A DNA stretch of 64,000 nucleotides from IMG/VR virus record IMGVR_UViG_3300036781_000418, positions 248,001 to 312,000 of that record; one strand, written 5' to 3'. Both the position numbers and the translations under genes were made by a program. The notes beneath the pieces were generated by a model. It ran no database searches. It saw only the letters and a list, made by a program, of their open reading frames with translations, and was not told the origin of the DNA. Shown in pieces: positions 6,214 through 39,303 of this stretch; the first letter of the stretch is position 1, and every line of letters begins with the position of its first letter.

Positions 6214-6214
6214 T

Positions 6215-7612: not shown

Positions 7613-7616
7613 AATT

Positions 7617-7690: not shown

Positions 7691-7722
7691 GCTAAATAGT
7701 CATGTACTCAATGGAGATCTAC

Positions 7723-7971: not shown

Positions 7972-7979
7972 CAAACTGA

Positions 7980-8053: not shown

Positions 8054-8059
8054 AACAAT

Positions 8060-8124
8060 GGGACCAATTCGGTCACTTGATTTTCGTTCCTTAAGAACCG
8101 TAAGTCATCGTTATCGTCCCGCCA
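8060..8124 (+). pseudogene. tRNA remnant
   Basis: GGGAC/GTCCC-GCCA ends; no recognisable T loop. Confidence 0.4.
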
Positions 8125-8129
8125 ACAAT

Positions 8130-8202
8130 GGAGCCTAAGCCTGATTGGTGAGGGTGCAGTATGATTGCTGTTAAGATGGAGTTCGAATCTCTATGGGCTC
8201 CC
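8130..8202 (+). pseudogene. tRNA-like gene with contracted anticodon loop
   Basis: Acceptor, D and T arms intact; CAGTA-TGAT-TGCTG 4-nt loop; no CCA. Confidence 0.55.
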
Positions 8203-8213
8203 CTAATCTGAAA

Positions 8214-8669
8214 GTGACTCTTGAGCCGGCTGGTAAGCGTGGCTTGAAGTTTCTGATCTACGCGGTAGTTAACGGACGTAAGCGTGAAGTTGGATACCTC
8301 AACTCCGCCGTCACTCGGAACATCACGAAGCATGAAGTACTCGCGGCTCACGATGACTACAAGCTCGTCAAGCGCATCTTCAAGCAGGTTCCGGACGAGT
8401 ACACGTTCAACTACTACTGGCTGCAGAAGCTCTTCGTCTACGAGGAGTACAGTGGTCTTGGTATTGGTTCAGCGGCCCTGCAAGTTTGGTTTACCAAGCT
8501 GCGATCGATCGCGATGGTGGCCTTGGAAGCCTATCCAATTGGGTACCGAACGAAGGTGGAGCTTGAACGGTTCTACCTCAAGAACAACTTCGTCGTGTTT
8601 CATCGACTGCGTCCAGCAGGAGAGCGACAACGGCGAGCAACGATGGCCATGACGTTCGTCAAGGCCTAA
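8214..8669 (+). CDS. GNAT-family acetyltransferase-like protein (start uncertain)
   Basis: LFVYEEYSGLGIGSAAL motif A; FYLKNNF motif B. Confidence 0.7.
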   Translation: MTLEPAGKRGLKFLIYAVVNGRKREVGYLNSAVTRNITKHEVLAAHDDYKLVKRIFKQVPDEYTFNYYWLQKLFVYEEYSGLGIGSAALQVWFTKLRSIAMVALEAYPIGYRTKVELERFYLKNNFVVFHRLRPAGERQRRATMAMTFVKA

Positions 8670-8676
8670 CGAATAT

Positions 8677-8752
8677 GGGTGATTGGTGTAGTTGGCAGCA
8701 TAGCGGTCTCCAAAACCGTTGGTCATGGGTTCGAGTCCCTGGTCGCCCGCCA
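8677..8752 (+). tRNA. tRNA-Trp(CCA)
   Basis: GCGGT-CTCCAAA-ACCGT, GCCA. Confidence 0.92.
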
Positions 8753-8809
8753 TATAGCTTTGAGTAAGCTTGCTAAATAGGAAGCAACAATTCCATTTAG
8801 GAGTCTCTC

Positions 8810-9046
8810 ATGGCACTTCGCAACGTAACGGGCCCAGCCCTGCACAGCTTCACGACTGACGAGCTTACCGCGATCGTCGGCAACTACGGCCCATCGGGCA
8901 CCATTGACGACGGCGCAATCGCTCCTGGTGCAATGGTTTGGAACACGGATGAGTCCGCAGTTTGGGTCTTTGACGGCACGACGTTCAGCGCCGTAGCCGC
9001 CGCTCCAGCTCCAGCTCCTTCGCCTGCACCGGCTCCATCGCCGTAA
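8810..9046 (+). CDS. Small late protein with (AP)n tail, fibre-module-like
   Basis: TAAATA 8774; GAMVWNTDESAVWVFDGTTF resembles fibre N-terminal repeat. Confidence 0.65.
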   Translation: MALRNVTGPALHSFTTDELTAIVGNYGPSGTIDDGAIAPGAMVWNTDESAVWVFDGTTFSAVAAAPAPAPSPAPAPSP

Positions 9047-9070
9047 TTCAGTCGTAGGCTGAAAACAAAG

Positions 9071-9100
9071 AAGGGGAACCGAGTGATCGGTTCCCCTTAC
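9071..9100 (+). terminator. Hairpin terminator
   Basis: AAGGGGAACCGA-GTGA-TCGGTTCCCCTT. Confidence 0.75.
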
Positions 9101-9104
9101 TTAC

Positions 9105-9378
9105 TTCGCGGTGACCCTTGGTGGTACCCTACTTTCTGGAGCAGCCAGGAAAGCGGAAAGGTCGGCTGAGGTTCCACACAACTGAAAGGAATCGTTTACC
9201 GGTGACCAAAGTTCCGGCAAAACACGACACCTCAGCTGGCCGTGTTCCTATTTGCTTCTCTAAGCAAGTACATTTTACGCAGCGACGTCTTCGGATAACA
9301 CTGCACATTTCAGGTTTAAGAAAGGATGCATCATGATGATCAGCTCGACGCTTGATGCGTCTGGTAAACACACCTCCT
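9105..9378 (+). ncRNA. Unidentified multi-stem RNA (about 270 nt)
   Basis: 13-bp stem 9160-9172/9229-9241 enclosing a junction; 10-bp stem 9324-9333/9353-9362; further hairpins; no convincing gene. Confidence 0.55.
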
Positions 9379-9381
9379 AAT

Positions 9382-9455
9382 GGGGGTGTAGCTCAAGGGT
9401 AGAGCAGGTGGCTTTTAACCACCCGGCGAGGGTTCGATCCCCTCCACCCCTACCA
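9382..9455 (+). tRNA. tRNA-Lys(TTT)
   Basis: GGTGG-CTTTTAA-CCACC, ACCA. Confidence 0.92.
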
Positions 9456-9489
9456 AATCACGTAAATAGCTGACCATATTGGAGTCCCC

Positions 9490-9918
9490 ATGAAGCTCAG
9501 CACCATTTCCGAACTCATCGCCATCAACGAAGCGGCGCTTAAGATCAGCGATACCGGTTGGTACGTAATCGATCCGACCGTGCACGACGGCGATAACCCG
9601 CACTACAAGAAGGCCGCTGGCCCGTACAGGACGCGTGAAGAGGCGAAGGAGTACGCCACTGGCAAGGACCAAGTTAAGTTCGGTCACATGGTCAACAACG
9701 GCTTCATTGAGGTCGATGAACATGGCACCTCGAACGAAGGCTACGTCGCCGTTTCACAGGCGCTGGTCTACGTGAAGAAGGCGATTGGCGCCCTTGCTGA
9801 AAGCGAGAACGAAGTGAAGGAGCACCTTGAGATGCTTGGCTTTGACATCTCCTTCGACAACCTGCTTCAACAGCTGAACGACCTTGAGGAACACCTTAAG
9901 GACGCGTCGACAAAATGA
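9490..9918 (+). CDS. Late protein with internal-protein-like N-terminus
   Basis: TAAATA 9463; MKLSTISELIAINE. Confidence 0.75.
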   Translation: MKLSTISELIAINEAALKISDTGWYVIDPTVHDGDNPHYKKAAGPYRTREEAKEYATGKDQVKFGHMVNNGFIEVDEHGTSNEGYVAVSQALVYVKKAIGALAESENEVKEHLEMLGFDISFDNLLQQLNDLEEHLKDASTK

Positions 9919-10358
9919 AACTGATTCAGCTGAATGAAAACCTTGACGAGGCGAAAATTGACGCCTTCATCAAGGCCTACAACGGCATTGAAGCGCCACT
10001 CGCTAAGAAGCTCAAGCCGAAAGGATCGCCTGAGATGATCAAGGCGGCCTTTGACCTTGCATTTGATCATCATCAACGAGATGAAGTTCTGGACTTTGAT
10101 GACGCGGCGATGACACGTGGCATCAAGGGCATCGAAGCCGCCCTCAACGCGGCCAAGGAGTACAAGACGTCAATTGACGTCGCCGCTTGCACCAAGGCCT
10201 CCATGGAGCTGAGTCAGCTCCGAAACTTTGGCAAGCTGGCCACTGACGTCGGCAACGCCATGTTCGTCGCTTTGCAGGGACTGAACAACGAACATTGGTC
10301 TAAGGATGATCAAGCCCAAGCCCTACTCGCCTGTAAGTCGGTAGGCATCAGTAAATAA
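9915..10358 (+). CDS. Late protein, paralog of 6768..7226
   Basis: MKLIQLNE; colinear similarity. Confidence 0.75.
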   Translation: MKLIQLNENLDEAKIDAFIKAYNGIEAPLAKKLKPKGSPEMIKAAFDLAFDHHQRDEVLDFDDAAMTRGIKGIEAALNAAKEYKTSIDVAACTKASMELSQLRNFGKLATDVGNAMFVALQGLNNEHWSKDDQAQALLACKSVGISK

Positions 10359-10359
10359 T

Positions 10360-10435
10360 GCATCGTTGACCTGAGAGGTTAAGGACCCTCCTTACAAGTG
10401 GGAATATGCTGGTTCGAGTCCAGCACGATGCACCA
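10360..10435 (+). tRNA. tRNA-Val(TAC)
   Basis: CTTACAA loop, ACCA. Confidence 0.88.
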
Positions 10436-10442
10436 TATAATA

Positions 10443-10518
10443 GCTCTGGAAGTGTTACAAGGTGGCATGACAGTTTCGTAATCTGTAGGACGCGGTTCGA
10501 GGCCGCGCCGGAGCACCA
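10443..10518 (+). tRNA. tRNA-Thr(CGT)
   Basis: TTCGTAA loop, ACCA. Confidence 0.85.
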
Positions 10519-10579
10519 AAATTCCCGGGAGGACGCGCAAGCGTCCTCCTATTTTCGCATCAACAACTGGAGAAAATCC

Positions 10580-10966
10580 ATGAACGCCGACTTCCATTCT
10601 CGCTTTATCACCAACACGGACGACACAGGCCGTTTCATCGTGAGCTCACAGCGGACGGGTATTCGGTACTACGTGGAACCGGTCGTGACGGAGCACACCC
10701 CTGAGTGGGGCTCCATCGATCCAGCCACCGGCAACCTTACCCACAAGAAGGGTGACGGCAAGTACCGTGGCGGTGTCTCACCGTCTGAGTCCATCGTGAA
10801 CGAGGATGCGGTCAAGGTTGGTGTCTTCGCGAAGGTGCACGACCTTGGACGAGGCGTGTCACCACACCAGGCGATTGACTACCTCGACGCACAGTACCCA
10901 ACCGTCAACCCAGCGTATGAGCTCACCGCTGAGTTTATCGGCTCCATCGTCAACCCAGCCTACTAA
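10580..10966 (+). CDS. Hypothetical phage protein
   Basis: GGAG RBS; ORF. Confidence 0.75.
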   Translation: MNADFHSRFITNTDDTGRFIVSSQRTGIRYYVEPVVTEHTPEWGSIDPATGNLTHKKGDGKYRGGVSPSESIVNEDAVKVGVFAKVHDLGRGVSPHQAIDYLDAQYPTVNPAYELTAEFIGSIVNPAY

Positions 10967-10974
10967 GGATTATC

Positions 10975-11196
10975 ATGGCTACCCTCAAGGACCTCGTTGG
11001 TCCGGACAAGACCGTCCACTTTCAATTCTATCGTAAGGGTGCGCTCTACTATCGCACGTCAGACAACTTTGAATTCTTGGTGCCGATTGAGGACTGTGGT
11101 GACGCGGAATTTTTGGCAATGGACAAGGCTATGATGTTCATGCGGTACATTCGCAAACAGCTAGCCGTCAACGCTGAAGGCAGGGAGGCTGTATGA
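10975..11196 (+). CDS. Hypothetical phage protein
   Basis: AGGA RBS; ORF. Confidence 0.7.
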   Translation: MATLKDLVGPDKTVHFQFYRKGALYYRTSDNFEFLVPIEDCGDAEFLAMDKAMMFMRYIRKQLAVNAEGREAV

Positions 11197-11372
11197 ACGC
11201 CAAGAAGCTGGAAAAGAAGAAGCTCAAGCTCGCCGAGCGGATCAAGCAGCTGGAGGATGGGCTCGTCCTCTCCCTCCAGAAGAAGTCCTCCTCAGCAACC
11301 GAGATCGACATGCCTGGCACGATGCGCCAGATCCGAGAGCTGAAGGAAGAGCTGGACGAGCTAAATAGCTAA
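11193..11372 (+). CDS. Small coiled-coil protein
   Basis: ATGA overlap, 59 aa. Confidence 0.6.
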   Translation: MNAKKLEKKKLKLAERIKQLEDGLVLSLQKKSSSATEIDMPGTMRQIRELKEELDELNS

Positions 11373-11384
11373 CCAACAATTTAC

Positions 11385-11459
11385 GCTGTCATAGTGCTAG
11401 TGGAAACACACGTCTTTGGTAAGGACGGATCGAAGGTTCGATTCCTTCTGGCAGCACCA
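11385..11459 (+). tRNA. tRNA-Thr(GGT)
   Basis: CGTCT-TTGGTAA-GGACG, ACCA. Confidence 0.9.
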
Positions 11460-18511: not shown

Positions 18512-19054
18512 ATGAAACCGTACCATCACCTTCAAGGCTTCATGCACCGCTGGTTGGTGTACAAGCTTGGGCGCTTGATGGTGCGCGTCCATCACTTTCT
18601 CGACGTGGATCGGACACCCTTCCACCACACCCACCCGTTCCACTACATCTCGATCGTCTACTGGGGTGGGTACACCGAGGAGGTAGTAGACGAACGTGGC
18701 ATCGTGTGGACGAAGTCATGGCGGGCGCCGGCCATCATCGTTCGTCGGCAGGAAGTTCCACACCGCATCATCAGCCTGCGTGGAGGTTGCTGCCGTACGC
18801 TGATCTTCACATGGTACACTGGTCGCACATGGCACCTACGCCGCATTCCCAACTTTACGCCTGAAGGTTACTTCAACTGCAAGGATGGAATGTACATGTT
18901 CAGTGACGGATTTCGTAAACGGTTCAACGGTCGCTGGTACAAGCTTTATCCAACGATCAACGAGGCGCGGGACACCCTGGTCTTGTCGATCCACCAGAAC
19001 ATAAACGCTGGTGAACCAACAAATCACTTCAGCGCGCGCCGCGCCTCACTATAA
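18512..19054 (+). CDS. Cupin-like protein
   Basis: HTHPF..ISIV..GGYTE..HRI. Confidence 0.65.
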   Translation: MKPYHHLQGFMHRWLVYKLGRLMVRVHHFLDVDRTPFHHTHPFHYISIVYWGGYTEEVVDERGIVWTKSWRAPAIIVRRQEVPHRIISLRGGCCRTLIFTWYTGRTWHLRRIPNFTPEGYFNCKDGMYMFSDGFRKRFNGRWYKLYPTINEARDTLVLSIHQNINAGEPTNHFSARRASL

Positions 19055-19061
19055 TTGGCGT

Positions 19062-19460
19062 ATGAGACAACCAATCATTCATCCAGGCGACGCTGACGCG
19101 TCGTTTGAGGACCATGAATTCGTGATTCGCTTCGCAGACGGCCGCTGGCACGCTGGCGACGGGCGAGCCGTCGACAAGCTACGCGAGGCCATCGTCTACG
19201 AGACCTCTACTGAGCTCAACGTGGACCTTGCACGCCTAAGACGCGCCAAGCCTTACCAGGGTCCGTGCGACTGTGGCTGCATGGACATGGTGGCTACCAC
19301 CTCCTTCGGCATGCTGAACTTCCTGAAGCGCCGTATGGAGGGTGCCGGTGTGTCGGACACCGTGGGTCAAGGCTACGCCCGTGATATCGGATTCATCCTG
19401 GAGCGTGAACGTCGGATGCTCCTCAACCTGCCAACCAACCGCCTCAAGGACAAATCATGA
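19062..19460 (+). CDS. Hypothetical protein
   Basis: TATAAT just upstream; ORF. Confidence 0.65.
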   Translation: MRQPIIHPGDADASFEDHEFVIRFADGRWHAGDGRAVDKLREAIVYETSTELNVDLARLRRAKPYQGPCDCGCMDMVATTSFGMLNFLKRRMEGAGVSDTVGQGYARDIGFILERERRMLLNLPTNRLKDKS

Positions 19461-19857: not shown

Positions 19858-20228
19858 TTGAGTACCTGTGGTATGTCCTGAGGCTGAACTTCAGATTTGG
19901 AGGTCCAGCTTCCGTCGGTGCAGTCATGCAGATGGAAGGCTACACTGACTGCGATATCCATGAAATTGAGCGGCACGTCGCCCATGAAGAGGCGCTTAAG
20001 CTCTGGAACCTGCTTGGTGAAGCGCCTCGGTCGCATATTGCGTCAGGTTTTGTACGTGACGTCTTTGGTTGGGCGGCCGGCGGAAAGCTGCCGGCGAGAA
20101 CGGCCCTCCTCTACGCACAGCACTCCGTGAACACCAACGAGACCAGCTGCTGGGTGCGGTGGGCTATGGAGGAGATCATGAGCCTGGTTGAAGGCTATGA
20201 CCTGGAGAACTATTCCGGCCGGAATTGA
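19854..20228 (+). CDS. Hypothetical protein
   Basis: ATGA-coupled. Confidence 0.6.
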   Translation: MIEYLWYVLRLNFRFGGPASVGAVMQMEGYTDCDIHEIERHVAHEEALKLWNLLGEAPRSHIASGFVRDVFGWAAGGKLPARTALLYAQHSVNTNETSCWVRWAMEEIMSLVEGYDLENYSGRN

Positions 20229-20246
20229 TCCTGCACCAGGAAATAT

Positions 20247-20310
20247 GTTACACAGTCCTGGGGCCGTTACACCTTCGGATATGTACATTTCGTCAGACAG
20301 GTCTATAATT
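20247..20310 (+). promoter_or_regulatory. GTTACA-box promoter, copy 1
   Basis: GTTACA-N13-GTTACA-N10-TGTACA-N16-TATAAT. Confidence 0.75.
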
Positions 20311-20377
20311 CGCTCAACGCCACAGAACGTGTGCGCCGGAACCGAGCCACCTCTCGGATACTTGCTGAGGAAAACGA

Positions 20378-20974
20378 ATGAACACAGCTCAAAGCGCCGG
20401 CAGCACCGGCGGAACTCCTTCGACGGCCACGAATCCGGCTGACACCTCCACCACGACCTCCACGGAACCCGGCACCACCACGGTGAATCCGGCTACGACG
20501 CCAGCTGGTACGCCGGACAACACCACCCCGCCGGCCCCGAAGGCCACGGTCAAGGTGAAGGCCGCCGCCAAGTCGACCAAGGTCAAGGCTGACGGCAAGA
20601 AGGAAGCTCCGAAGAAGGAGGCCAAGCCGAAGGCTGAGCCCAAGGCCAAACCCGTCAAAGAAGCCAAGCCGCCGAAGGAGCCCAAGGCTCCGCGCGTTCC
20701 GACCGAGCGCAAGCCGGCCAAGGACGCCATGGCCCTCCGCACGCGCTTCTCCTTCGGTGACGCGTTCCTCCGCGTCGCTGAAGAAGGCAAGCACCACGAC
20801 ATGGGCAAGCTGGCCGCGTTCGGCGCTGCCTGCGGCCTGGGTACCTTCGAGGAACTCTCGAAGCGTGAGCACCAAAACCTGAGCGACGCGATCATGGGCC
20901 ACATCAAGCTCGGCGACCGCAAAGACTTCCCGAAGAACTTCAAGCTCGACGAAGGCAAGATCGCCGGTATCTGA
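20378..20974 (+). CDS. Thr- and Lys/Ala/Pro-rich protein with SFG..FL..HHD.GKL domain
   Basis: H1-like linker; C-domain resembles 22673 and 27366 products. Confidence 0.8.
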   Translation: MNTAQSAGSTGGTPSTATNPADTSTTTSTEPGTTTVNPATTPAGTPDNTTPPAPKATVKVKAAAKSTKVKADGKKEAPKKEAKPKAEPKAKPVKEAKPPKEPKAPRVPTERKPAKDAMALRTRFSFGDAFLRVAEEGKHHDMGKLAAFGAACGLGTFEELSKREHQNLSDAIMGHIKLGDRKDFPKNFKLDEGKIAGI

Positions 20975-20991
20975 TCGGCCACGCCATCCAC

Positions 20992-21020
20992 AAGGGGACC
21001 GTAAGGTCCCCTTTCCGTTT
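20992..21020 (+). terminator. Intrinsic terminator
   Basis: AAGGGGACC-GTAA-GGTCCCCTTT. Confidence 0.75.
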
Positions 21021-21032
21021 TCAGGAGAACTC

Positions 21033-21413
21033 ATGAAGCCTCTGTTCCCATTTGACCTGTCCACATACGACTGCGACATGCTGCTCAGCGACAACCCTGA
21101 GCACGCCGAGGCCTTCCGAAAGCTCACGGTATATCGCACCGTTAACCGTCATGAAGTCACCGCCACGGTCACCGAGGACGCAAAGGTCAAGATCAACGCG
21201 TGGGCGTCCAGCGACAGCGGCTTCATGCAGCAGGCCGGTACGTACTGGACGAAGATCATTCAGCTGTCTCAACTCCAGGTCCGGCAATACGTCATGAAGG
21301 AGGTGCAGCGCCGGGCGATTGAGGAGATTATGGAGGAGGATCGCCAGGAACAGCTTCAACGGGTGGCCGCCAGAGCCAAGTCGATCGCTGCTAAGCTTGG
21401 TGTGTCGAAGTAG
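21033..21413 (+). CDS. Hypothetical protein
   Basis: AGGAG RBS. Confidence 0.7.
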   Translation: MKPLFPFDLSTYDCDMLLSDNPEHAEAFRKLTVYRTVNRHEVTATVTEDAKVKINAWASSDSGFMQQAGTYWTKIIQLSQLQVRQYVMKEVQRRAIEEIMEEDRQEQLQRVAARAKSIAAKLGVSK

Positions 21414-21468
21414 TACCGACCCGGCGACACGAGGGAGGCTGAGGGCCTCCCTTCTTCGTTTGTAAATA

Positions 21469-22554
21469 GTGCATTCACTTGAGCTCCTACGAATGCGCCT
21501 GACCACCCTACTAGAGTCCCGAAAGGTCCGTGACTACCGTCATCCTCACGCTAACATGGCACGAGAAAAGTACTTCGGAGATGACAAGGGTCCGGAGTAC
21601 ATCGACCCGAAGGACGGCTTTCACTTTGAGACGAACTCCTACGGCGAGCTTGTCCTGTCAAGCACGAACAACCACAACTACTCCGCCATCGTGTCCATGG
21701 ATCCGGAGGAGGTGGCCAAGCTGCGCAAGCCAGGTCAAGGTCAAGGTCTACCTCGCGCCCTTGCGGATCGAATCAAGCAGGGCGGCAACGAGACGTGGAA
21801 CGAGTTCGGCGGCAAGGTCACCTACGCCGACAAGACGATTCGCTGCACCATCCAGCACATCCACAACAACAGGAAGCGGACCCGCATCGCCGAGGACATT
21901 CACGTAATCAAGACCGCGTTGTCGCAGCTGAAAAAGTACGGCGTCACCGACGACTTCAAGCTGACTGCGATTCAAAGCCCGTTCAAGAATATGACGGTGG
22001 GTGAAGTGCTCGGTATGCCGGACAGCAACTTCGTCTACAACATGGCCAACGCCACCACGGCCGCCATGCGCAAGCACATCAAGAACGTCAACAAGAACGG
22101 CAAATCTCGAGTTGTTAAGGACATGGACTCCTTCACCGAGCTGGCGAACAAGACGGACCTTGATTGGCCTGATCGCTACTGGCACGCGCAGGACATCACC
22201 ACCAACTCCTACTGGTTTGGCGGCAAGATGGAGTCGCTCCACGGAGACGAGGACGGTGAAATTCTGTCGCTGAAGGACCACGCCAAGCTCTTCTCCAAGC
22301 TCCTGCTCCGCCACATCGCGAAGCTGCAGGACGAAGGCATCGACGTGGTGTTCCCACCGGACGGCACGCGTCGCATGCAGCAGGCCATGCACCCAGACTG
22401 GGTATCACTTACGGGTGAGGATCTGAAGGAGCGCAAGACGGAGAAGCTTGAGCAGATGAAGGAGGACATGACGAAGTTCTTCAACGGAATCGAGGACGAT
22501 GCCAAGAAGATCGAGCTGAACCTGCTCTTGACCTACTTGGGGATCACGATCTAG
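21469..22554 (+). CDS. Late hypothetical protein
   Basis: TAAATA 21463; RLTTLLE motif near N-terminus. Confidence 0.75.
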   Translation: MHSLELLRMRLTTLLESRKVRDYRHPHANMAREKYFGDDKGPEYIDPKDGFHFETNSYGELVLSSTNNHNYSAIVSMDPEEVAKLRKPGQGQGLPRALADRIKQGGNETWNEFGGKVTYADKTIRCTIQHIHNNRKRTRIAEDIHVIKTALSQLKKYGVTDDFKLTAIQSPFKNMTVGEVLGMPDSNFVYNMANATTAAMRKHIKNVNKNGKSRVVKDMDSFTELANKTDLDWPDRYWHAQDITTNSYWFGGKMESLHGDEDGEILSLKDHAKLFSKLLLRHIAKLQDEGIDVVFPPDGTRRMQQAMHPDWVSLTGEDLKERKTEKLEQMKEDMTKFFNGIEDDAKKIELNLLLTYLGITI

Positions 22555-22557
22555 AAC

Positions 22558-22620
22558 GTTACAACTTCGGGATAACGTTACACTTTAGCAGTGTACAAAT
22601 CCCCAGGTCATGCTAGAATT
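22558..22620 (+). promoter_or_regulatory. GTTACA-box promoter, copy 2
   Basis: GTTACA-N13-GTTACA-N9-TGTACA-N16-TAGAAT. Confidence 0.75.
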
Positions 22621-22672
22621 CAACTCATGCAAACAAGCAATCCCGCTAGTTGCAGAACCTGGAGAATACATC

Positions 22673-22987
22673 ATGACCTCGACTTCCAAGACCGCACGAA
22701 CCGCCGCTACCCGTGACCTGGCCGCCCATCGCATCGCGATGAACAGCCGCGGTCGCATGTCCTTCGGCCGCACGTTCCTCGACACCCTCAAGGCTGGCAA
22801 CTCCCACCACGACGCCGCCAAGCTGTCCGCCTTCTTGGTCGCCAACGGCGCCGAGACCGCGAAGTCCATCAAGGCGAAAGCCAAGTCCGGCGAGCTGACG
22901 CTGGAATCCTTGAGCAAGGCCGCTACGACCCTGATCAAGAAGACACCGGAAGACCAACTGGTGATGAAGTTCAACCTGAACGACTAA
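22673..22987 (+). CDS. Small basic protein, paralog of 27366..27653
   Basis: AAHRIAMNSRGRMSFGRTFL...HHDAAKLSAF. Confidence 0.8.
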   Translation: MTSTSKTARTAATRDLAAHRIAMNSRGRMSFGRTFLDTLKAGNSHHDAAKLSAFLVANGAETAKSIKAKAKSGELTLESLSKAATTLIKKTPEDQLVMKFNLND

Positions 22988-23040
22988 ACCTCAGCCACCT
23001 ACGCCCACATCGCTGGGCGTAGGACCTTTCTGGAGACATC

Positions 23041-23247
23041 ATGACTGTGACGAATGTCCTCCGCGAGTTGCTTGCCGTTCGCGAGTTACGCGCCGAGTAT
23101 ATGCGCCAAAAGCAGCGACGCGCTGTGAAGTTCCGCCGCGACCTTGCCCAAGTTGCTGAGGCTGATCGTCTGAAAGCCGAGCTGGACGTTCGAGAGCCGG
23201 CCGCCTGGAAGATGGCCGAGGACGTCCTTCGAATCCAAGGAGATTAA
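23041..23247 (+). CDS. Hypothetical protein
   Basis: GGAG RBS. Confidence 0.6.
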   Translation: MTVTNVLRELLAVRELRAEYMRQKQRRAVKFRRDLAQVAEADRLKAELDVREPAAWKMAEDVLRIQGD

Positions 23248-23248
23248 C

Positions 23249-23428
23249 ATGATCAACCATGACTACGACGCAGTCAGCCTTCAAGCTGACGTTTGGAAGG
23301 CCGTGGCTCGCAGTCAGCTGCAACGTCCGGACTTTAACAGCCGTGGCGCAGCCATTGCGTTCGCCAAGGCGGTGTTCGAGGGTAAGCGTAAGGCCGAACC
23401 GGCCGTTGAGGAGATCAAGCATGACTGA
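23249..23428 (+). CDS. Small hypothetical protein
   Basis: GGAG RBS, 59 aa. Confidence 0.55.
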   Translation: MINHDYDAVSLQADVWKAVARSQLQRPDFNSRGAAIAFAKAVFEGKRKAEPAVEEIKHD

Positions 23429-24107
23429 AGACCGCATCATCGACAAGATCAAGAAGTGCCTGGAGCTGGCCAAGGACGATCGTGCTAACCCATCCGAGGC
23501 CGCCAACGCCCTGCGTCAGGCCCAAGCCCTGATGAAGAAGCACAACGTCACCTTGGGTCACATCGACCGGTCGGCCATCGGCACGGTGAACGTCACGGCC
23601 TGCAGTGTCTCGCGCCCGAAGCGCTGGGAGCTGGACCTGATGCACCTGATGGGTCGTGCCTTTGGCTGTAAGGTCACCTGGATCTCGGGTCGGTCTGGTA
23701 CGCGCTTCGGTCGGTTTAACCTGATCGGCGTGAAGTCTCAGCTGGAGATCGCCCACTACACGGCCGAGGTCATGCAGCGGAAGCTCTACAAGGCCCGCGC
23801 CAACTACGTGTCCACGTTGCCGCTCTGGATGACACGCGGTGAGAAGACCCAGGCGGCCGACGGTTTCTGCATCGGTTGGGTCGAGGCAGTCCAGAAGACG
23901 GTCCACGACTTTGAGCAGGACGGCAAGGTTAAACTGTTGCTCGAGACGATCGTCAAGGAAGCAACTGGTGATCGTCAGGCGAACATCCATGATCGTGAAG
24001 TGGCGGACGAGGACATGATGGCGGGCTACCGTGTCGGCAAGACCGAGTCGATCCACCGCCCCATGAAGGACCGTGACCCCCAACTTCAGATTGGACACGA
24101 CTCATGA
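23421..24107 (+). CDS. DUF2786-domain protein
   Basis: IDKIKKCLELA..ANPSEAANALRQAQALMKKHNV. Confidence 0.8.
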   Translation: MTEDRIIDKIKKCLELAKDDRANPSEAANALRQAQALMKKHNVTLGHIDRSAIGTVNVTACSVSRPKRWELDLMHLMGRAFGCKVTWISGRSGTRFGRFNLIGVKSQLEIAHYTAEVMQRKLYKARANYVSTLPLWMTRGEKTQAADGFCIGWVEAVQKTVHDFEQDGKVKLLLETIVKEATGDRQANIHDREVADEDMMAGYRVGKTESIHRPMKDRDPQLQIGHDS

Positions 24108-24286
24108 AGAACATTCCCAACATCACGTACCTGATGCGCTGCATCCGGTGTGATCACGAGCAGAAGGTAACCTCAGCCGCGGCCCATGAGGACGACAAGG
24201 GCGAGCAGAGCTTCTACTTTGGTTCTCGATACGACTTCTGTGACCTGTGCGACGGTCACATGGTCGTCATCAAGCAGCTCGATTAA
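24104..24286 (+). CDS. Small zinc-ribbon protein
   Basis: CIRC...CDLC. Confidence 0.6.
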   Translation: MKNIPNITYLMRCIRCDHEQKVTSAAAHEDDKGEQSFYFGSRYDFCDLCDGHMVVIKQLD

Positions 24287-24363
24287 CCACCTCGAAACCA
24301 CCGACAGGGCCTTAGGGCCCTTTGTTCGTTTCTTAAATAGAGGATCACAATGTGGATCCTCGA

Positions 24364-24843
24364 ATGAAGCTTGCCACCCTCCATGAAAGCGGCACCCTAG
24401 ATACCAAGGACGTCTCGACGCTCGTCCAGTTCCTGACTGATGTATGCGAAAATCATAAGTTCAGTCACTGGCAGCCGTTTCTCGGTTTGGTAAAGGACTA
24501 TGGGCACTACGACGCCGCGTCAGTTGAGGCCATGTACATGGGAATGTACATGGACGGCACTATTGGAATAGGAAGCCTAGATCAGGTTGTCAAGAATCTA
24601 AATCAGCTGAACAATGAGTTTACTCGGAACCTTGACCACGTGATGGGCAAGGAAGCCAAGGAGCTTATCAGCCGAGGCATGATCAACCGCTTCGATCAAC
24701 TAGGTGAGACAATAAAGCTTGCCAACGCCTTTCACACCCTGATTCAGTGGGCTGACGACGACAAAGATGAATTTGATTCAGACGAACGGGCAATCTACGA
24801 CAAGCTAATCACGCACCTTGAAAACAAGGCCCAGACGGTCTAA
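24364..24843 (+). CDS. Late protein with internal-protein-like N-terminus
   Basis: TAAATA 24334; MKLATLHE. Confidence 0.75.
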   Translation: MKLATLHESGTLDTKDVSTLVQFLTDVCENHKFSHWQPFLGLVKDYGHYDAASVEAMYMGMYMDGTIGIGSLDQVVKNLNQLNNEFTRNLDHVMGKEAKELISRGMINRFDQLGETIKLANAFHTLIQWADDDKDEFDSDERAIYDKLITHLENKAQTV

Positions 24844-24867
24844 ATACCAGATCACACGGATTCCCAA

Positions 24868-25347
24868 ATGAAGCTAGCAACCCTACGAGAAAGCCTAACT
24901 GGCAAGGCCCTCATCGATCACATCGAGCTCGCCGCGACCGAGGTCTTCGGCGAGGAGAACTCCCAGTGGGCGCCAGGCATCAACACCAAAGTAGAGGTCC
25001 TTGAACAAGGTCTCAAGTGGGCCGTTCACGAATGGAACGATTCAGGTGGTCACCATGATTTTGGATTTAGCCTTAACAGTCGAGCTGTCAAGCTTGGCCA
25101 GGCCGCCTCTTCTCTGCAGCTAAGCCCTGCACCGAATCCGGCTAAGCTTGAGGTGCTTGAGGAATTTGACCGAAAGGTCAATGAACTTGTCGATGTTTAC
25201 TCTCAGCTGGATGCAGTTTCCACCGCCGCCGAGATGTTCTTCGACATCGTTCATGACATGAACCAGGTCATCGAAGATGACGAGGATAAGTACAAAACAA
25301 AGGTCGCGATGAACACCATGAAGCTCATGGGCGCGGAGGTCTTCTAA
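24868..25347 (+). CDS. Late protein with internal-protein-like N-terminus
   Basis: TAAATA 24841; MKLATLRE. Confidence 0.75.
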   Translation: MKLATLRESLTGKALIDHIELAATEVFGEENSQWAPGINTKVEVLEQGLKWAVHEWNDSGGHHDFGFSLNSRAVKLGQAASSLQLSPAPNPAKLEVLEEFDRKVNELVDVYSQLDAVSTAAEMFFDIVHDMNQVIEDDEDKYKTKVAMNTMKLMGAEVF

Positions 25348-26126
25348 TGAACCTAGAACAACTACTCGAAGGCGACGACGCAACCGAGAGCACACCAGTC
25401 GCGCTCTTCAAAGAACTACGTGCGCTCGTTGCGAAGTTTGAGGCGCCACTTACCGTCGCTGCGCGAAAAACTAGAACCGGAACGGTCATCGTGTTTAAGC
25501 CGTCGAATAAGTCAGACGCCAACAATATCCTGTCGAACGAAGACCTGATCATGCTGTTCAGCAAACAGCTCAAGAAGGTCTTGGCTGAGAAGATCCACGC
25601 TGGTCAGAAGTTCGTGCTCTTTCAGCTCCAACTCTCCGACGCGCAGGCAGCCCATTGGTTCAAGCAGTTCAACAAGGAAGACACACTTGACGAGCTGGAC
25701 GCCTTCACAAAGGACGGCCGACTACCAAAGATCTACGTTCAGCGTGGGGCGGACGACCTTGGTGAAATGACGATCGACTTGACGATTGGGTATAAGACGC
25801 CTAGCGCGAAACGAGCCAAGAGCTTTCAAACCAGTTTTAGCTTTTCAGCGCCCACCGACACGATCAACGCCATCGTCAAGATCGCCAACCGCGATGGACG
25901 CTATCTCCAACTACATTATCCATCCGTGGTGTTCAACGAGCTGGTCAAGTTGCTGGTGTCACTTGGCGCGCCAATCGACAAGGTCATCACCGACCTTGAT
26001 CAACAGTTTCCTAGCGCGAGCATGCACGTGATCGCGTACCAGTCGCTTAAGCGAGCTCGCAACGTCCCTGGACCAAGGATTGGAGAGCTGATGTTGAAGC
26101 TCGCCAACGAATCGACTAAGGCCTAA
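25347..26126 (+). CDS. Late protein with internal-protein-like N-terminus
   Basis: MNLEQLLE. Confidence 0.75.
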   Translation: MNLEQLLEGDDATESTPVALFKELRALVAKFEAPLTVAARKTRTGTVIVFKPSNKSDANNILSNEDLIMLFSKQLKKVLAEKIHAGQKFVLFQLQLSDAQAAHWFKQFNKEDTLDELDAFTKDGRLPKIYVQRGADDLGEMTIDLTIGYKTPSAKRAKSFQTSFSFSAPTDTINAIVKIANRDGRYLQLHYPSVVFNELVKLLVSLGAPIDKVITDLDQQFPSASMHVIAYQSLKRARNVPGPRIGELMLKLANESTKA

Positions 26127-26127
26127 C

Positions 26128-26652
26128 GTGAAACTTTCAAACCTTACCGAGTCAAGTGGTGGCAAGCCAATGGTTGATTCGCTAGTAAAGCTTGCCAATG
26201 AGGTGCACAGCACGACCAACGCGCAACGAGTGAGAAGCGCAATGGACGGCTTGTCAGACGAAAGCGTACAGCACGCCCTTGAACAAGCCGTCAAGCTGTC
26301 GCAGAAGTACGGCTCAGACGGTGCCTACAACTTGTTCTCAAATCCACTTGACAACTACGACAAAATTAGGTTGGACATCGACAAGCTTCATGTGGGAAGT
26401 GAGGATTCTCACGGTGACAGGGTGCAGGTGCTTGATCCAAAGCTGCTGGTTAAGTTGAAGGCCGTCTCAGAGAGCTTCATCTCCGTAATTGAGGAGCTGC
26501 ACGATGGGGCGAACCTCATCAAACAGCTCCTTAAGCTGTTTGACTTCTTTGAGCACTATCATCGAAACATCGAAACGCGTGATCATGAAGATGCGGACGT
26601 TCACAAGGCGTTGATCAAGGCCATTTTTAAAAAGCTAGGATTGGATCTATGA
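26128..26652 (+). CDS. Late protein with internal-protein-like N-terminus
   Basis: MKLSNLTE (GTG start). Confidence 0.7.
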   Translation: MKLSNLTESSGGKPMVDSLVKLANEVHSTTNAQRVRSAMDGLSDESVQHALEQAVKLSQKYGSDGAYNLFSNPLDNYDKIRLDIDKLHVGSEDSHGDRVQVLDPKLLVKLKAVSESFISVIEELHDGANLIKQLLKLFDFFEHYHRNIETRDHEDADVHKALIKAIFKKLGLDL

Positions 26653-26716
26653 AGAAGGGTTTCCTATTTGAAGCTGGTCCGGTGTCGGCGAAGAAGTTTG
26701 GATTGGAGTTTACGGA

Positions 26717-27223
26717 ATGAAGATCGCGCAGATCAACGAAACGGTTACCCCTGAACGTGCACTTGAAGTGCTGATCAAGGTTCTCAACGAGATCATCAAT
26801 GATAAATCCACGCCACAACCTATGTCCAGTAACCGCTTGGACAAGATGAGCAAGCTATCGCATTCAGCGCAGGAGTGGGGGGCGGCCGCGGCGGTGGAAA
26901 GTTGGAACAAAAACGGCGGCGTCATGCCGTCCATCAACCTTGTCGACGTTAAGCAATTTCACCGGCCGCTAGGCCAGTTGGAAGACGCAAAGTTTCACGG
27001 TTGGCTTGGGCCCAAGCACGGTGAAGAGGCGATAAAGCAGATGCAGGCAATTATAGCAGAATACAGTGAACTGTCTGAAAGACTACAGGCGTTTGAACTC
27101 GCCACAAGCATACTGGCGATCCTTCAAGGTGAAGCTGATGATTCCCGCTCCAACAAGTACACAATCAGTCTAGCCAAAGGCGCCTTCCGTGCGCTAAATC
27201 TAAAGGTGAACGGCACAAGCTAA
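26717..27223 (+). CDS. Late protein with internal-protein-like N-terminus
   Basis: MKIAQINE. Confidence 0.7.
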   Translation: MKIAQINETVTPERALEVLIKVLNEIINDKSTPQPMSSNRLDKMSKLSHSAQEWGAAAAVESWNKNGGVMPSINLVDVKQFHRPLGQLEDAKFHGWLGPKHGEEAIKQMQAIIAEYSELSERLQAFELATSILAILQGEADDSRSNKYTISLAKGAFRALNLKVNGTS

Positions 27224-27226
27224 TCC

Positions 27227-27290
27227 GTTACAGTTCCCTGGACTTGTTACACTCTAATGATGTACAAGTCCTGGATTGGGTATAGAATTC
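27227..27290 (+). promoter_or_regulatory. GTTACA-box promoter, copy 3
   Basis: GTTACA-N13-GTTACA-N9-TGTACA-N16-TAGAAT. Confidence 0.75.
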
Positions 27291-27365
27291 AACTCATGCA
27301 ATCAAGCAATAAATCAAAAGCTTGAAAGCAAGTTGAACCCTTACCAAACTTTCTAGGAGCCTACC

Positions 27366-27653
27366 ATGTCGAAGCAAGCCAACCAAATCGCCGCCCACCG
27401 TGTTGCCATGAACGGCCGTGGTCGTATGTCCTTCGGTCGTACCTTCCTCGCCACGCTGCGTGAAGGTAAGAACCACCACGACGCCGGCAAGCTGTCCGCC
27501 TTCATCGTCGCCGCTGGTGTCGCCACGGCCAAGCAGCTGAAGTCGCTCGCTGCCAAGGGCCAGGTTACCCTGGAAACGCTGAACGACGTCGCTCATGGCA
27601 TCGTTACCCTGCTGCCCGCCGATCAACTGCCGGTCCGCACGAACCTGCAATGA
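27366..27653 (+). CDS. Small basic protein, paralog of 22673..22987
   Basis: AAHRVAMNGRGRMSFGRTFL...HHDAGKLSAF. Confidence 0.8.
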   Translation: MSKQANQIAAHRVAMNGRGRMSFGRTFLATLREGKNHHDAGKLSAFIVAAGVATAKQLKSLAAKGQVTLETLNDVAHGIVTLLPADQLPVRTNLQ

Positions 27654-27808
27654 GACAACTCGTCAAAAAGCTTCTGATCGCGTTCATCACCTTTACCATG
27701 GAAATGGTCCATGGTGATGAACGCTACAGATGCAAACAGGCCCTTGGTCAGAAGCTCTACCTCAAGAAGAGGATGATCCGACGGAGACGCGGCAAACACT
27801 ACGTCTAG
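27650..27808 (+). CDS. Small basic protein
   Basis: ATGA-coupled, 52 aa. Confidence 0.5.
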   Translation: MRQLVKKLLIAFITFTMEMVHGDERYRCKQALGQKLYLKKRMIRRRRGKHYV

Positions 27809-27818
27809 GAGAGCAGTT

Positions 27819-28730
27819 TTGAGCTTTTTCAAAAATAAACCCAAAAAGGTAACCGCTGGCCAGCACCAGTCAGTCATGCGCCGCGTGATGCCAAAGGTTC
27901 CACGGCTGACATCTACTGACTACGATCGGCCACAAGAACAAAGTTTGGTGTATACCACTGAACTTGTCAGCGCCGCTTTCGCAAGGCGCTATTGGTCTAA
28001 CGACTCATATTCCAAGATCGCCGATGATCTTGGAATATCAATTGAGGAAGCCAAAAAAGCGGTGTCAAAGAAACACAAAGACGCCAAGGTGTATAAAAGC
28101 TGGTGTGATGTTATTCCACCACTTGAGTATAAGACAACAGTGGTTCGTGTTCGACCTGTGAAGGTTGAAGATAAGGCCACAGTGCAGCTGCGGCGAGAGG
28201 CTGACGAAGATGCAGAGGCCGCCTTAGTAGATGGTGAAATTTTGAGGATAATCAAGCGCGATTTAGTTCGCCTTGAAAAGAATCCGCACATGGCTGAAAA
28301 ATTTCCACTTGAGTTGATTGCCACAACCTATGAGGTAAGCTTGGCTGTGGTGCAATCAATCGATCGATCTCGTGCCATTTTTCCAATCTTTGGGGATGCG
28401 CCATCAAAGCTGTCAGCTGAAATTTTAGTGGCGCTTAAGATGCACCATCCAGTCAGTGCGCAGAGAGCCATCGACGAAGCACGGGCAAAGCTGCTGCCCC
28501 ATCAGCGAGCAATAATCTCTGAACTGGATAGATGGTATCACGGGGTCAGATACCTTGTCATGACCAACCTTACCTACAACGATACATGGCATGATTACGA
28601 GCACACAAAGATCACTCATGGTGGTCATACGGTGCTGTTGTTTAAGACTGGCGCCGCTCGACTGCATGCCGCCGCTTTTCTACAAGCGCAAGATCTGACA
28701 GTTAATACCTTAACTGGTTTTGTAGAGTAG
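27819..28730 (+). CDS. Hypothetical protein, possible HTH segments; AT-richer DNA
   Basis: YSKIADDLGISIEEAKKAV. Confidence 0.65.
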   Translation: MSFFKNKPKKVTAGQHQSVMRRVMPKVPRLTSTDYDRPQEQSLVYTTELVSAAFARRYWSNDSYSKIADDLGISIEEAKKAVSKKHKDAKVYKSWCDVIPPLEYKTTVVRVRPVKVEDKATVQLRREADEDAEAALVDGEILRIIKRDLVRLEKNPHMAEKFPLELIATTYEVSLAVVQSIDRSRAIFPIFGDAPSKLSAEILVALKMHHPVSAQRAIDEARAKLLPHQRAIISELDRWYHGVRYLVMTNLTYNDTWHDYEHTKITHGGHTVLLFKTGAARLHAAAFLQAQDLTVNTLTGFVE

Positions 28731-39261: not shown

Positions 39262-39303
39262 GCTGGGGACGCTGACGATGTGGCGACGACCTATGATCAT
39301 AGT

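What the first reader, a model, noticed from the sequence alone, without database searches (positions are those of the whole stretch)
20247..27653. Three copies of a GTTACA-box promoter, each driving a member of one small protein family
Seen: GTTACA-N13-GTTACA-N9/10-TGTACA-N16-TA(T/G)AAT at 20247, 22558 and 27227. Downstream ORFs 20378, 22673 and 27366 share R(F/M)SFG..FL....G..HHD.(G/A)KL.AF. The first carries this domain after Thr-rich and H1-like K/A/P segments. Inference: a dedicated regulon with fixed-phase activator or repressor boxes, possibly autoregulated by these basic proteins.
Basis: partly seen in the sequence, partly recalled or inferred. Interest (0 to 1): 0.6.

Follow-up and report, generated by a model that had tools for sequence, protein, structure and literature searches.

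The report
Conserved jumbo-phage promoter class
The three repeats are real, strongly conserved promoters of a type shared by a whole group of giant soil phages. In this region they switch on a new family of small, very basic proteins, but they are not a private circuit of those proteins.

Summary
GTTACA-N13-GTTACA-N9/10-TGTACA-N16-TA(T/G)AAT occurs at window 20247, 22558 and 27227 (0.02 two-box matches expected), and each copy precedes a paralogue of one protein family.

The window lies in a complete 342.6-kb uncultivated soil jumbo phage; its nearest cultured relative is Ralstonia phage RsoM2USA. GTTACA-N30-32-TAKAAT occurs 10 times, all on the + strand (0.03 expected). Seven of these sites precede unrelated genes, including an AAA ATPase, a helicase-like protein, a lipoprotein and a membrane protein. 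A fourth family paralogue has a variant promoter.

The same composite promoter recurs in related phage contigs and in RsoM2USA, which has no detectable family member. It is at chance level in 185,579 cellular genomes. Boxes are conserved while spacers are not.

Best reading: a clade-specific, sigma-70-type phage promoter class. TGTACA is the -35 and TAKAAT the -10, with an upstream GTTACA(CTTT) recruitment element at about -49..-44 plus optional extra copies. The family genes are its most consistently retained targets.

The proteins form a new, rare family (33 relatives among 1.84 billion representatives). They are very basic, some carry H1-like tails, and they match no known fold. Autoregulation by them is unsupported.

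The parts
20247..20252 (+). P1 distal GTTACA box (box 1), about -69..-64
20266..20271 (+). P1 proximal GTTACA box (box 2), about -50..-45; followed by CCTT
20282..20287 (+). P1 -35-like hexamer TGTACA
20304..20309 (+). P1 -10 hexamer TATAAT; TSS inferred at about 20316
   Evidence: the TSS offset is calibrated on leaderless genes
20378..20974 (+). Gene A: 198 aa. Thr/Pro-rich N-terminus, K/A/P-rich H1-like segment, then the conserved basic domain.
   Evidence: an orthologue with the same layout is P0016
20992..21013 (+). Intrinsic-terminator-like hairpin with T-tract after gene A
22558..22563 (+). P2 distal GTTACA box
22577..22582 (+). P2 proximal GTTACA box, followed by CTTTAG (extended element conserved across the clade)
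22592..22597 (+). P2 -35-like TGTACA
22614..22619 (+). P2 -10 TAGAAT; TSS inferred at about 22626. A conserved C/A-rich leader follows at 22620-22641.
22673..22987 (+). Gene B: 104 aa, pI 10.2, family member. The longer ORF from ATG 22610 starts inside the promoter and is an artefact.
27227..27232 (+). P3 distal GTTACA box
27246..27251 (+). P3 proximal GTTACA box
27261..27266 (+). P3 -35-like TGTACA
27283..27288 (+). P3 -10 TAGAAT; TSS inferred at about 27295. The 77-nt leader is conserved in relatives L066 and L067.
27366..27653 (+). Gene C: 95 aa, pI 11.0, family member. The AF2 model has pLDDT 84.

Best explanation
The three repeats are the fullest copies of a promoter class that is specific to a clade of RsoM2USA-like jumbo phages.

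Proposed mechanism:
- Host RNA polymerase with its primary sigma factor uses TA(T/G)AAT as the -10 and TGTACA, 16 nt upstream, as the -35. It starts about 7 nt after the -10. No phage RNA polymerase or sigma factor is detectable.
- The invariant GTTACA, usually extended to GTTACAC(T/C)TT, lies at about -49..-44. It is a separate upstream recruitment element: it also occurs on promoters that lack TGTACA, and TGTACA promoters in relatives occur without it.
- It most likely binds a trans-acting factor or the polymerase alpha C-terminal domains on one face of the helix. Additional upstream GTTACA copies (box 1, at variable distance) add binding sites and strength.

In this genome the class heads about 10-11 transcription units. 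All four paralogues of a new family of small, very basic proteins are among them, and their promoter link is retained across the clade. I infer that these proteins are made early or in the middle of infection, in quantity, and that they bind nucleic acid. The K/A/P tail of protein A and of several relatives acts as an H1-like DNA-coating arm.

Shown: the motif, its statistics, its conservation, its separability into modules, its wider gene set, and its phage specificity.
Inferred: the TSS, sigma-70 use, activation rather than repression, the identity of the box-binding factor, and the proteins' function.
For: Motif statistics in the whole 342,591-bp genome:
- Two-box motif: 4 sites against 0.0 in shuffles.
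- GTTACA-N30-32-TAKAAT: 10 sites, all on the + strand, against 0.03.
- TGTAC(A/T)-N16-TAKAAT: 6 sites against 0.02.
- GTTACA itself is depleted (54 against 99), and allowing one mismatch adds no further site.

TSS calibration: 10 genes have a -10-like hexamer exactly 6 nt before the ATG (neighbouring distances have 1 or fewer). One of them, at genome 320788, belongs to the class.

Wider gene set: AAA ATPase, helicase-like protein, lipoprotein, membrane protein and others.

Conservation:
- 11 of 13 family genes from independent metagenome contigs carry GTTACA..TGTAC..N16..-10. Boxes are about 100% identical, while the 16-nt spacer is 35% identical.
- In L075 the box 2 to -35 distance is 19 instead of 9, which is one helical turn.
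- The exact composite occurs in 9 IMG/VR contigs, most of them fragments of relatives. Class sites number 1-5 per record with 0 in reversed-pattern controls.
- Orthologous non-family genes keep the promoter.
- RsoM2USA has 3 class sites in front of non-family genes and no family member.

Phage specificity: 0 exact composites in 185,579 cellular genomes. The relaxed pattern gives 36 scattered single hits, mostly in AT-rich genomes.

No phage transcription machinery: no Sigma70_r2, T7-type RNAP, Rpb2, MotA or AsiA in the genome.

Proteins:
- pI 10-11 in 30 of 34 members.
- 33 relatives among 1.84 billion representative proteins.
- No Pfam or PHROG family.
Against: - There are no transcript data. 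The only sequencing run holding this DNA is a soil DNA metagenome, so the TSS, timing and strength are inferred.
- GTTACACTTT does not resemble the A/T-rich E. coli UP-element consensus, and no box-binding protein is identified.
- TGTACA matches TTGACA at only 4 of 6 positions, and five class members have no recognisable -35.
- Within the limited DNA held for relatives L066/L071/L072 (32 kb) and L075, GTTACA boxes are seen only at family genes. A specific box-family link is therefore not excluded.
- The proteins' nucleic-acid binding rests on charge and composition only. Fold searches gave nothing significant: best Z 5.7, SAP/Rho-N-like rows at Z 3-4, and Foldseek E > 1.
Confidence: 0.62

Rival explanations
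1. One reading: the small basic proteins themselves bind the GTTACA/TGTACA boxes and autoregulate a dedicated regulon.
For: - All four paralogues carry the promoter or a variant of it.
- The gene-promoter link survives to about 22-30% protein identity.
- In the DNA held for L066/L071/L072 and L075, GTTACA boxes occur only before family genes, although L075 has two other TGTACA-N16-TATAAT promoters without the box.
- The proteins are very basic.
- Language-model neighbours are Cro/CI-type HTH clusters at score 0.90, which the tool rates as a weak lead.
Against: - Seven of ten sites in this genome, and most sites in relatives, drive other genes.
- RsoM2USA, a complete genome, has class promoters but no family member with either profile. 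The same search does find members in G006.
- Three to four paralogues with variable low-complexity tails look like abundant DNA-coating proteins rather than a sequence-specific regulator.
- There is no HTH, RHH or other DNA-reading fold by Pfam, PDB profile or fold search.
Confidence: 0.1
2. The boxes are operators for a repressor, phage- or host-encoded. The repressor occludes the -35 (TGTACA) and upstream DNA, shutting this gene set off at a set time rather than activating it.
For: - TGTACA is a palindrome that overlaps the -35.
- TACA-N9/10-TGTA between box 2 and the -35 can be read as an inverted repeat.
- Spacer 1 and spacer 3 tend to be complementary or share CCNGG-like palindromes: mean z is -2.1 over 11 promoters, and L067 reaches z -6.5.
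Against: - Five class promoters lack TGTACA and have no good -35 at all. That is the signature of activator-dependent promoters.
- The box 2 to -35 distance changes by one full turn in L075, and the distal boxes have variable number and spacing. This fits recruitment sites better than a fixed operator.
Confidence: 0.15
3. The similarity is only a relic of recent tandem duplication of promoter-plus-gene cassettes, with no selection on the boxes.
For: - B and C are fairly close paralogues (53% identity).
- They share the leader sequence after the -10.
Against: - Boxes are invariant while the intervening spacers are near random: 35% identity in the 16-nt spacer.
- Gene A is only 36% identical to C yet keeps all four elements.
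- The same elements occur before unrelated genes and in other phages.
Confidence: 0.02
4. The elements act at the level of nucleic-acid structure. A stem formed by the two spacers would enclose box 2 and TGTACA, serving for example as a processing or termination signal for read-through transcripts.
For: - Spacer 1 / spacer 3 complementarity has negative z in 11 of 11 promoters.
- At genome 320727 a perfect terminator-like hairpin uses the GTTACA box as its 3' arm.
Against: - The effect is modest apart from L067, and a shared palindromic CCNGG-type motif can explain it.
- The loop would be about 31 nt.
- The conserved letters are the would-be loop (the boxes), not the stem.
- No Rfam family matches the region.
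Confidence: 0.05

Closest known systems
Phage T4 middle promoters (MotA box plus sigma-70 -10, with AsiA-mediated sigma appropriation)
   Same: - A phage-specific promoter class that keeps a sigma-70-type -10.
- It depends on a phage-specific upstream element.
- It sits in a T4-like programme: this phage also has a T4-like late motif, CTAAATA(G), as its most enriched upstream word.
   Different: - There is no MotA box (TGCTTtA at -30). The conserved element lies at about -47, with a -35-like hexamer retained in half of the sites.
- No MotA or AsiA homologue was found (those searches had no positive control).
Class I activator-dependent or UP-element promoters of bacteria (CRP at -61.5; rrnB P1 UP element)
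   Same: - An element upstream of the -35, on promoters that often have a weak -35.
- It tolerates a shift of one helical turn (L075).
- Extra upstream copies occur.
   Different: - The sequence is not A/T-rich and does not match the E. coli UP consensus (recalled from the literature, not tested here).
- The sites are short direct repeats, not a palindromic dimer site.
- The binding factor is unknown.
Lambda CII-dependent promoters (direct repeats TTGC-N6-TTGC around the -35)
   Same: A phage activator site made of short direct repeats at a promoter with a poor -35.
   Different: The repeats here lie upstream of the -35 rather than straddling it. They are 6 nt long with 13-15 nt (or 3-4 nt) between them, and the sequence is different.
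Ralstonia phage RsoM2USA / Xanthomonas phage XacN1 group of jumbo phages
   Same: - Nearest cultured relative: PolB 44% identity, similar genome size, many tRNAs, no phage RNAP.
- RsoM2USA carries the same promoter type at three places.
   Different: - The RsoM2USA paper has no promoter analysis: the word 'promoter' occurs 0 times.
- RsoM2USA lacks the small basic protein family.
Lys/Ala/Pro-rich histone-H1-like bacterial proteins (AlgP of Pseudomonas, Hc1/Hc2 of Chlamydia, the C-terminal tail of mycobacterial Hlp)
   Same: Protein A, P0016, P0031, P0022 and P0028 carry K/A/P-rich, highly basic low-complexity segments.
   Different: - The resemblance is compositional only.
- The tail is N-terminal to a conserved ~85-aa helical domain that has no Pfam, PDB or fold match.
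- B, C and D lack the tail.

Membership tests
Sigma-70 (primary sigma) promoter | -10 hexamer close to TATAAT | tested here: met
   TATAAT or TAGAAT at all 10 class sites; 5-6 of 6 consensus positions.
Sigma-70 (primary sigma) promoter | -35 hexamer close to TTGACA, 16-18 nt upstream of the -10 | tested here: inconclusive
   TGTAC(A/T) at N16 matches TTGACA at 4 of 6 positions in 6 sites, and the consensus scan accepts P1-P3. Five class sites have no recognisable -35.
Sigma-70 (primary sigma) promoter | Transcription start 6-8 nt downstream of the -10, made by host holoenzyme | not testable with these tools
   No RNA data exist. Indirect support only: 10 genes have a -10 exactly 6 nt before the ATG, which implies leaderless starts.
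T4 MotA-dependent middle promoter | MotA box (a/t)(a/t)(a/t)TGCTT(t/c)A centred at -30, replacing the -35 | tested here: not met
   The sequence at -34..-29 is TGTACA or not conserved; there is no TGCTT.
T4 MotA-dependent middle promoter | MotA and AsiA encoded by the phage | tested here: inconclusive
   PF09158 and PF09010 give no hit in the genome, but the control genomes gave none either.
T4-type late promoter | TATAAATA-like element at -10 without a -35 | tested here: not met
   The CTAAATA(G) motif is abundant elsewhere (74 against 4.5 expected) but absent from P1-P3.
UP element (alpha-CTD site) | A/T-rich tract between -60 and -38 | tested here: not met
   Box 2 plus its flank, cGTTACAC(T/C)TT, is mixed in composition. 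The position fits (-52..-39) but the sequence does not. The consensus is recalled from the literature.
OmpR/PhoB-type response-regulator site | Tandem direct repeats with a 10-11 bp period next to the -35 | tested here: not met
   Box periods are 19-21 bp (or 9-10 in L073, L076 and L084) and 15-16 bp to TGTACA. No composite sites occur in cellular genomes.
Known DNA-binding protein folds (HTH_XRE, RHH, SAP) | Significant sequence-profile or structural match | tested here: not met
   - Pfam on 34 members: no recurrent family.
- PDB profile: E >= 0.06.
- Foldseek on PDB and BFVD: E > 1.
- VIA-align: best Z 5.7, SAP/Rho-N rows Z 3.3-3.8, below the tool's noise guide.
- Atlas: HTH neighbours at 0.90 with 138 of 256 shared features, a lead only.
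H1-like K/A/P-rich nucleoid proteins | Lys/Ala/Pro-rich repetitive basic segment | tested here: met
   Protein A residues 54-112 have 21 K+R in 59 residues, pI 10.3. Tails are similar in P0016, P0031, P0022 and P0028. This shows composition only, not homology.

The most novel reading that the evidence does not exclude
The GTTACA element is the recognition site of a still unidentified phage-encoded transcription activator. That activator would define a 'middle' gene class in RsoM2USA-like jumbo phages and would work like T4 MotA without being related to it. Its best-conserved targets would be a new family of phage histone-like proteins that coat or remodel DNA during infection. A more radical variant, that the family proteins themselves are this activator, is not excluded but is unlikely.
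Probability: 0.3. Interest if true: 0.7.

Novelty: new variant of a known kind. Interest (0 to 1): 0.48.

Why it matters
Nothing is known about how RsoM2USA/XacN1-like jumbo phages, which lack their own RNA polymerase, time their roughly 450-490 genes. This analysis gives three promoter types for one such phage:
- sigma-70-like promoters with a GTTCAC-type -35;
- the GTTACA/TGTACA class;
- a T4-like late motif.

The second type is conserved across the clade, is phage-specific, and is present in a cultured phage of Ralstonia solanacearum, so it can be tested directly.

The analysis also defines a new, rare family of small basic phage proteins. Some have H1-like tails, and they are candidates for phage-encoded nucleoid or chromatin proteins. 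Finally, it supplies compact strong-promoter parts for GC-rich soil hosts.

Tried and rejected
- Megablast of window 20000-28000 against the phage and plasmid collections: no match.
- tblastn of protein C against phages: no match.
- Word-based protein search: only the protein itself and one 81% relative, whose contig starts 20 nt before the gene and so holds no promoter.
- The search for related loci with the family alignment in viral and metagenome contigs, and with the 332-aa neighbouring protein in viral contigs: nothing confirmed.
- Five PolB-related IMG/VR fragments: no family member and no class site, but they are fragments and therefore uninformative.
- Fold searches on two AF2 models (pLDDT 80.7 and 84.3) gave no significant neighbour. 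The ESM Atlas structure library was unavailable.
- Reading box 1 or box 2 as the -35 of additional tandem promoters: rejected, because no -10-like hexamer lies 16-18 nt downstream of either box (by eye).
- A conserved leader hairpin (AGCTTG-AAAG-CAAGTT in P3 and L066): rejected, because L067 does not keep the pairing.
- RNA evidence: none available. The single run that holds the DNA is a soil DNA metagenome.
- Complex prediction (homodimer) was not run, because no claim here rests on it.
- Literature search for GTTACA phage promoters found nothing relevant.


Full report
**1. The observation**

The pattern GTTACA-N12-14-GTTACA has exactly three matches in the 64-kb window, at 20247, 22558 and 27227, all on the + strand. 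Dinucleotide shuffles give 0.02 on average. Reading the DNA confirms the full layout:
- box 1, N13, box 2;
- N10 (P1) or N9 (P2, P3);
- TGTACA, N16, then TATAAT (P1) or TAGAAT (P2, P3).

A generic sigma-70 scan accepts all three at 9-10 of 12 consensus positions. It also finds a terminator-like hairpin after the first gene, at 20992-21013.

The downstream ORFs at 20378, 22673 and 27366 are homologous: phmmer gives 1e-29 for B/C, 4e-8 for A/C and 6e-5 for A/B (alignment). Protein A has a Thr/Pro-rich acidic N-terminus, a K/A/P-rich segment (21 K+R in 59 residues) and then the shared domain.

**2. Context**

The window is bases 248001-312000 of a single 342,591-bp virus record. That record has a 127-bp terminal repeat and is rated complete. 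The only sequencing run that holds it is a soil DNA metagenome, so no RNA evidence exists.

The genome encodes:
- tail-fibre proteins, Ro60/TROVE, a PrkA-DUF444-SpoVR set and an RNA ligase;
- a family-B DNA polymerase and a ribonucleotide reductase;
- 17-18 tRNAs in the window alone.

The nearest cultured relative is Ralstonia phage RsoM2USA (343.8 kb; PolB 44% identity). Next come XacN1-like Xanthomonas and Stenotrophomonas jumbo phages.

No sigma-70 region 2, T7-type RNAP, Rpb2 domain, MotA or AsiA is detectable. The RsoM2USA paper likewise reports no phage RNAP, and it contains no promoter analysis. Transcription by the host polymerase is thus the default assumption.

**3. The promoter is a genome-wide class, not a private one**

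In the whole genome:
- The two-box motif occurs four times. The fourth copy, at genome 19774, precedes an AAA-ATPase-like gene.
- GTTACA-N30-32-TA(T/G)AAT occurs ten times, all on the + strand.
- TGTAC(A/T)-N16-TAKAAT occurs six times.

Shuffles give 0.0, 0.03 and 0.02 respectively. GTTACA as a word is depleted (54 against 99 expected). Allowing one mismatch in it adds no further upstream site, so the hexamer is essentially invariant in the class.

The genes behind the seven non-family sites are an AAA ATPase, a 77-aa protein, a 141-aa protein, a 251-aa protein, a lipoprotein, a small membrane protein and a helicase-like protein.

A fourth paralogue of the protein family lies at genome 50711-51040. 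It has TGTACA-N16-TAGAAT, but its upstream boxes are inverted (TGTAAC).

An unbiased word count in 207 upstream regions puts the class in perspective:
- The top word is CTAAATA(G), a T4-like late motif (TAAATA 74 against 4.5 expected).
- Next come -10-like words (TACAAT, TAGAAT, TATGAT).
- GTTACA follows at 18 against 2.2.

By eye, most other -10 elements are paired with GTTCAC-like -35 hexamers at N17-18. The phage therefore appears to have three promoter types.

**4. Where the boxes lie relative to the start**

Ten predicted genes have a -10-like hexamer exactly 6 nt before their ATG, while neighbouring distances have one gene or none. The simplest reading is leaderless mRNAs that start at the A of the ATG, 7 nt after the -10. 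One of these genes (genome 320788) belongs to the GTTACA class.

With that calibration:
- TGTACA is at -34..-29;
- box 2 is at about -49..-44;
- box 1 is at about -68..-63.

This is inference; no 5' ends are available.

**5. Conservation**

A profile search of 1.84 billion representative proteins found only 33 relatives of the family. I read the upstream DNA of those that could be fetched. Including the window's own genes, 11 of 13 family genes carry GTTACA..TGTAC..N16..-10. These are A, B and C, plus L065, two genes in L066, L063/L064, L067, L069, L073 and L075. The exceptions are paralogue D and P0009 (L068), which keep only the TGTACA and -10 part.

Protein identity to C in this set falls to roughly 22-30%. 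Between promoters the 16-nt spacer is 35% identical, while the -35 is 97% and the -10 is 84% identical. Box 2 was part of the search pattern, so its 100% identity is by construction.

In L075 the distance from box 2 to TGTACA is 19 rather than 9. That is one helical turn, as expected for an element that must face the polymerase. The distal box is much freer:
- N13 in this genome;
- N14-15 in several relatives;
- N3 in L073 and L076;
- three boxes at N4 in L084.

A direct DNA search settled the scope. The exact composite GTTACACTTT-N5-TGTACA-N16-TAKAAT occurs in nine IMG/VR contigs, at eleven sites. Most of these contigs are fragments of relatives of this phage, sharing proteins at 40-70% identity. 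One is a 349,660-bp, 97%-complete genome. Class sites number 1-5 per record, with none in reversed-pattern controls. Most of these sites precede non-family genes. Homologues of the AAA ATPase and of the gene at genome 143039 keep a class promoter.

RsoM2USA has three class sites, two of them with TGTACA. They lie before a 210-aa protein, a 362-aa protein and a lipoprotein-like protein. It has no family member with either profile, although the same search does find members in G006.

In 185,579 bacterial and archaeal genomes the exact composite is absent. The relaxed composite gives 36 scattered single hits, mostly in AT-rich genomes, which is about the chance level. The architecture is therefore phage-specific and clade-wide.

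**6. The proteins**

- No Pfam or PHROG family matches, either for the window proteins or for 34 family members.
- No PDB relative is found by profile search.
- AlphaFold models are confident (pLDDT 84 with the 34-sequence alignment). They show a short strand, four to five helices and a C-terminal strand.
- Structural searches give nothing above noise. Foldseek E-values exceed 1. The best VIA Z-score is 5.7, to an unrelated trypanosomal protein. SAP, Rho-N and BTHB-type rows score Z 3-4.
- Language-model neighbours are Cro/CI-type HTH clusters at 0.90, with few shared features. The tool itself rates this as a lead only.

What is solid:
- 30 of 34 members have pI of about 10-11.
- Several members carry K/A/P- or A/T-rich N-terminal tails of variable length.
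- The invariant residues are R18, G24, D39 and K42 in C numbering.
- The phages carry two to four paralogues, sometimes in tandem behind one promoter.

I infer abundant nucleic-acid-binding proteins made from strong early or middle promoters. This is an inference from composition and context.

**7. Mechanism and rivals**

The best-supported model is a sigma-70-type core (TGTACA / N16 / TAKAAT) with a modular upstream GTTACA(CTTT) element. That element recruits the polymerase, either through a phage-encoded factor or directly through the alpha C-terminal domains. Extra upstream copies add strength.

Evidence for modularity:
- Five sites in this genome have the box but no -35.
- L075 and RsoM2USA have TGTACA promoters without the box.

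By analogy with T4, the class could be the 'middle' class, but timing is unknown.

The rivals fare as follows:
It is not excluded, because in the limited DNA of two relatives the box is seen only at family genes.
- A repressor-operator reading is possible. TGTACA is a palindrome, and the spacers share CCNGG-like complementarity with a mean z of -2.1. It fits the -35-less members poorly.
- A pure duplication relic is contradicted by the footprint pattern.

**8. Verdict**

This is a new variant of a known kind of system, a phage-specific promoter class with an upstream recruitment element, coupled to a new protein family. Interest is moderate. It is undescribed for this jumbo-phage clade and is testable in the cultured relative, but it is not conceptually unprecedented.

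Noticed in passing
whole genome; in the window e.g. 1564-1578, 5832-5846, 19050-19064, 39292-39306: Ten predicted genes have a -10-like hexamer (TANRAT) exactly 6 nt before their ATG, while neighbouring distances have one gene or none. This suggests a set of leaderless mRNAs in this jumbo phage.
   Followed up: partly
whole genome upstream regions: The most enriched upstream word is CTAAATA(G): TAAATA occurs 74 times against 4.5 expected. This looks like a T4-type late promoter, although no gp55-like factor was searched for.
   Followed up: partly
window 24352-24843, 24868-25347, 26128-26652, 26717-27223: Four adjacent ORFs of 159-174 aa all begin MK(L/I)A.L.E and align at 19-23% identity. They form a second, weak paralogue family lying between genes B and C.
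   Followed up: partly
window 22620-22641 and 27289-27365; L066, L067, L063: The transcribed leader right after the -10 is conserved and C/A-rich: ACTCATGCAA(A/T)CAAGCAA. Related CCAACCAAAC stretches occur at other class promoters and in RsoM2USA. It may be a translation or stability element.
   Followed up: partly
window 20253-20265 vs 20288-20303, and the same spacers in P2, P3 and relatives: The spacer between the two GTTACA boxes tends to be complementary to the spacer between TGTACA and the -10. z is negative in 11 of 11 promoters (mean -2.1), and L067 has a perfect 10-bp match. This may reflect a shared CCNGG-like palindrome.
   Followed up: partly
window 22610-22672; protein P0005: Gene callers can start gene B at the ATG inside the promoter (catgcTAGAAT...). 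The database relative P0005 carries such a spurious N-terminal extension (MLEYNSCK...), translated from its own -10 and leader.
   Followed up: yes
window 45610-47322 and 51919-56813: The phage encodes a Ro60/TROVE-vWA protein and a complete PrkA / DUF444 (YeaH-like) / SpoVR-like trio. The related 42-kb contig also has Ro60. No Y-RNA-like Rfam match was found in the window.
   Followed up: no
window 5642-11459: A cluster of 17-18 tRNA genes lies here, including duplicated Phe, Asn, Ile, Gln, Lys and Thr species.
   Followed up: no
genome 320727-320760 (outside the window; locus L019): A perfect 11-bp-stem hairpin followed by a T-rich run uses the class GTTACA box as its 3' arm. A terminator and the next promoter therefore overlap, and that promoter appears to make a leaderless helicase-like mRNA.
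   Followed up: partly
L079/L082 (IMG/VR relatives), syntenic with genome 170346-171785: In these relatives a family member sits behind the class promoter at the position where this genome has a small membrane-protein gene behind a class promoter. The promoter slot appears to be conserved while the cargo gene differs.
   Followed up: no
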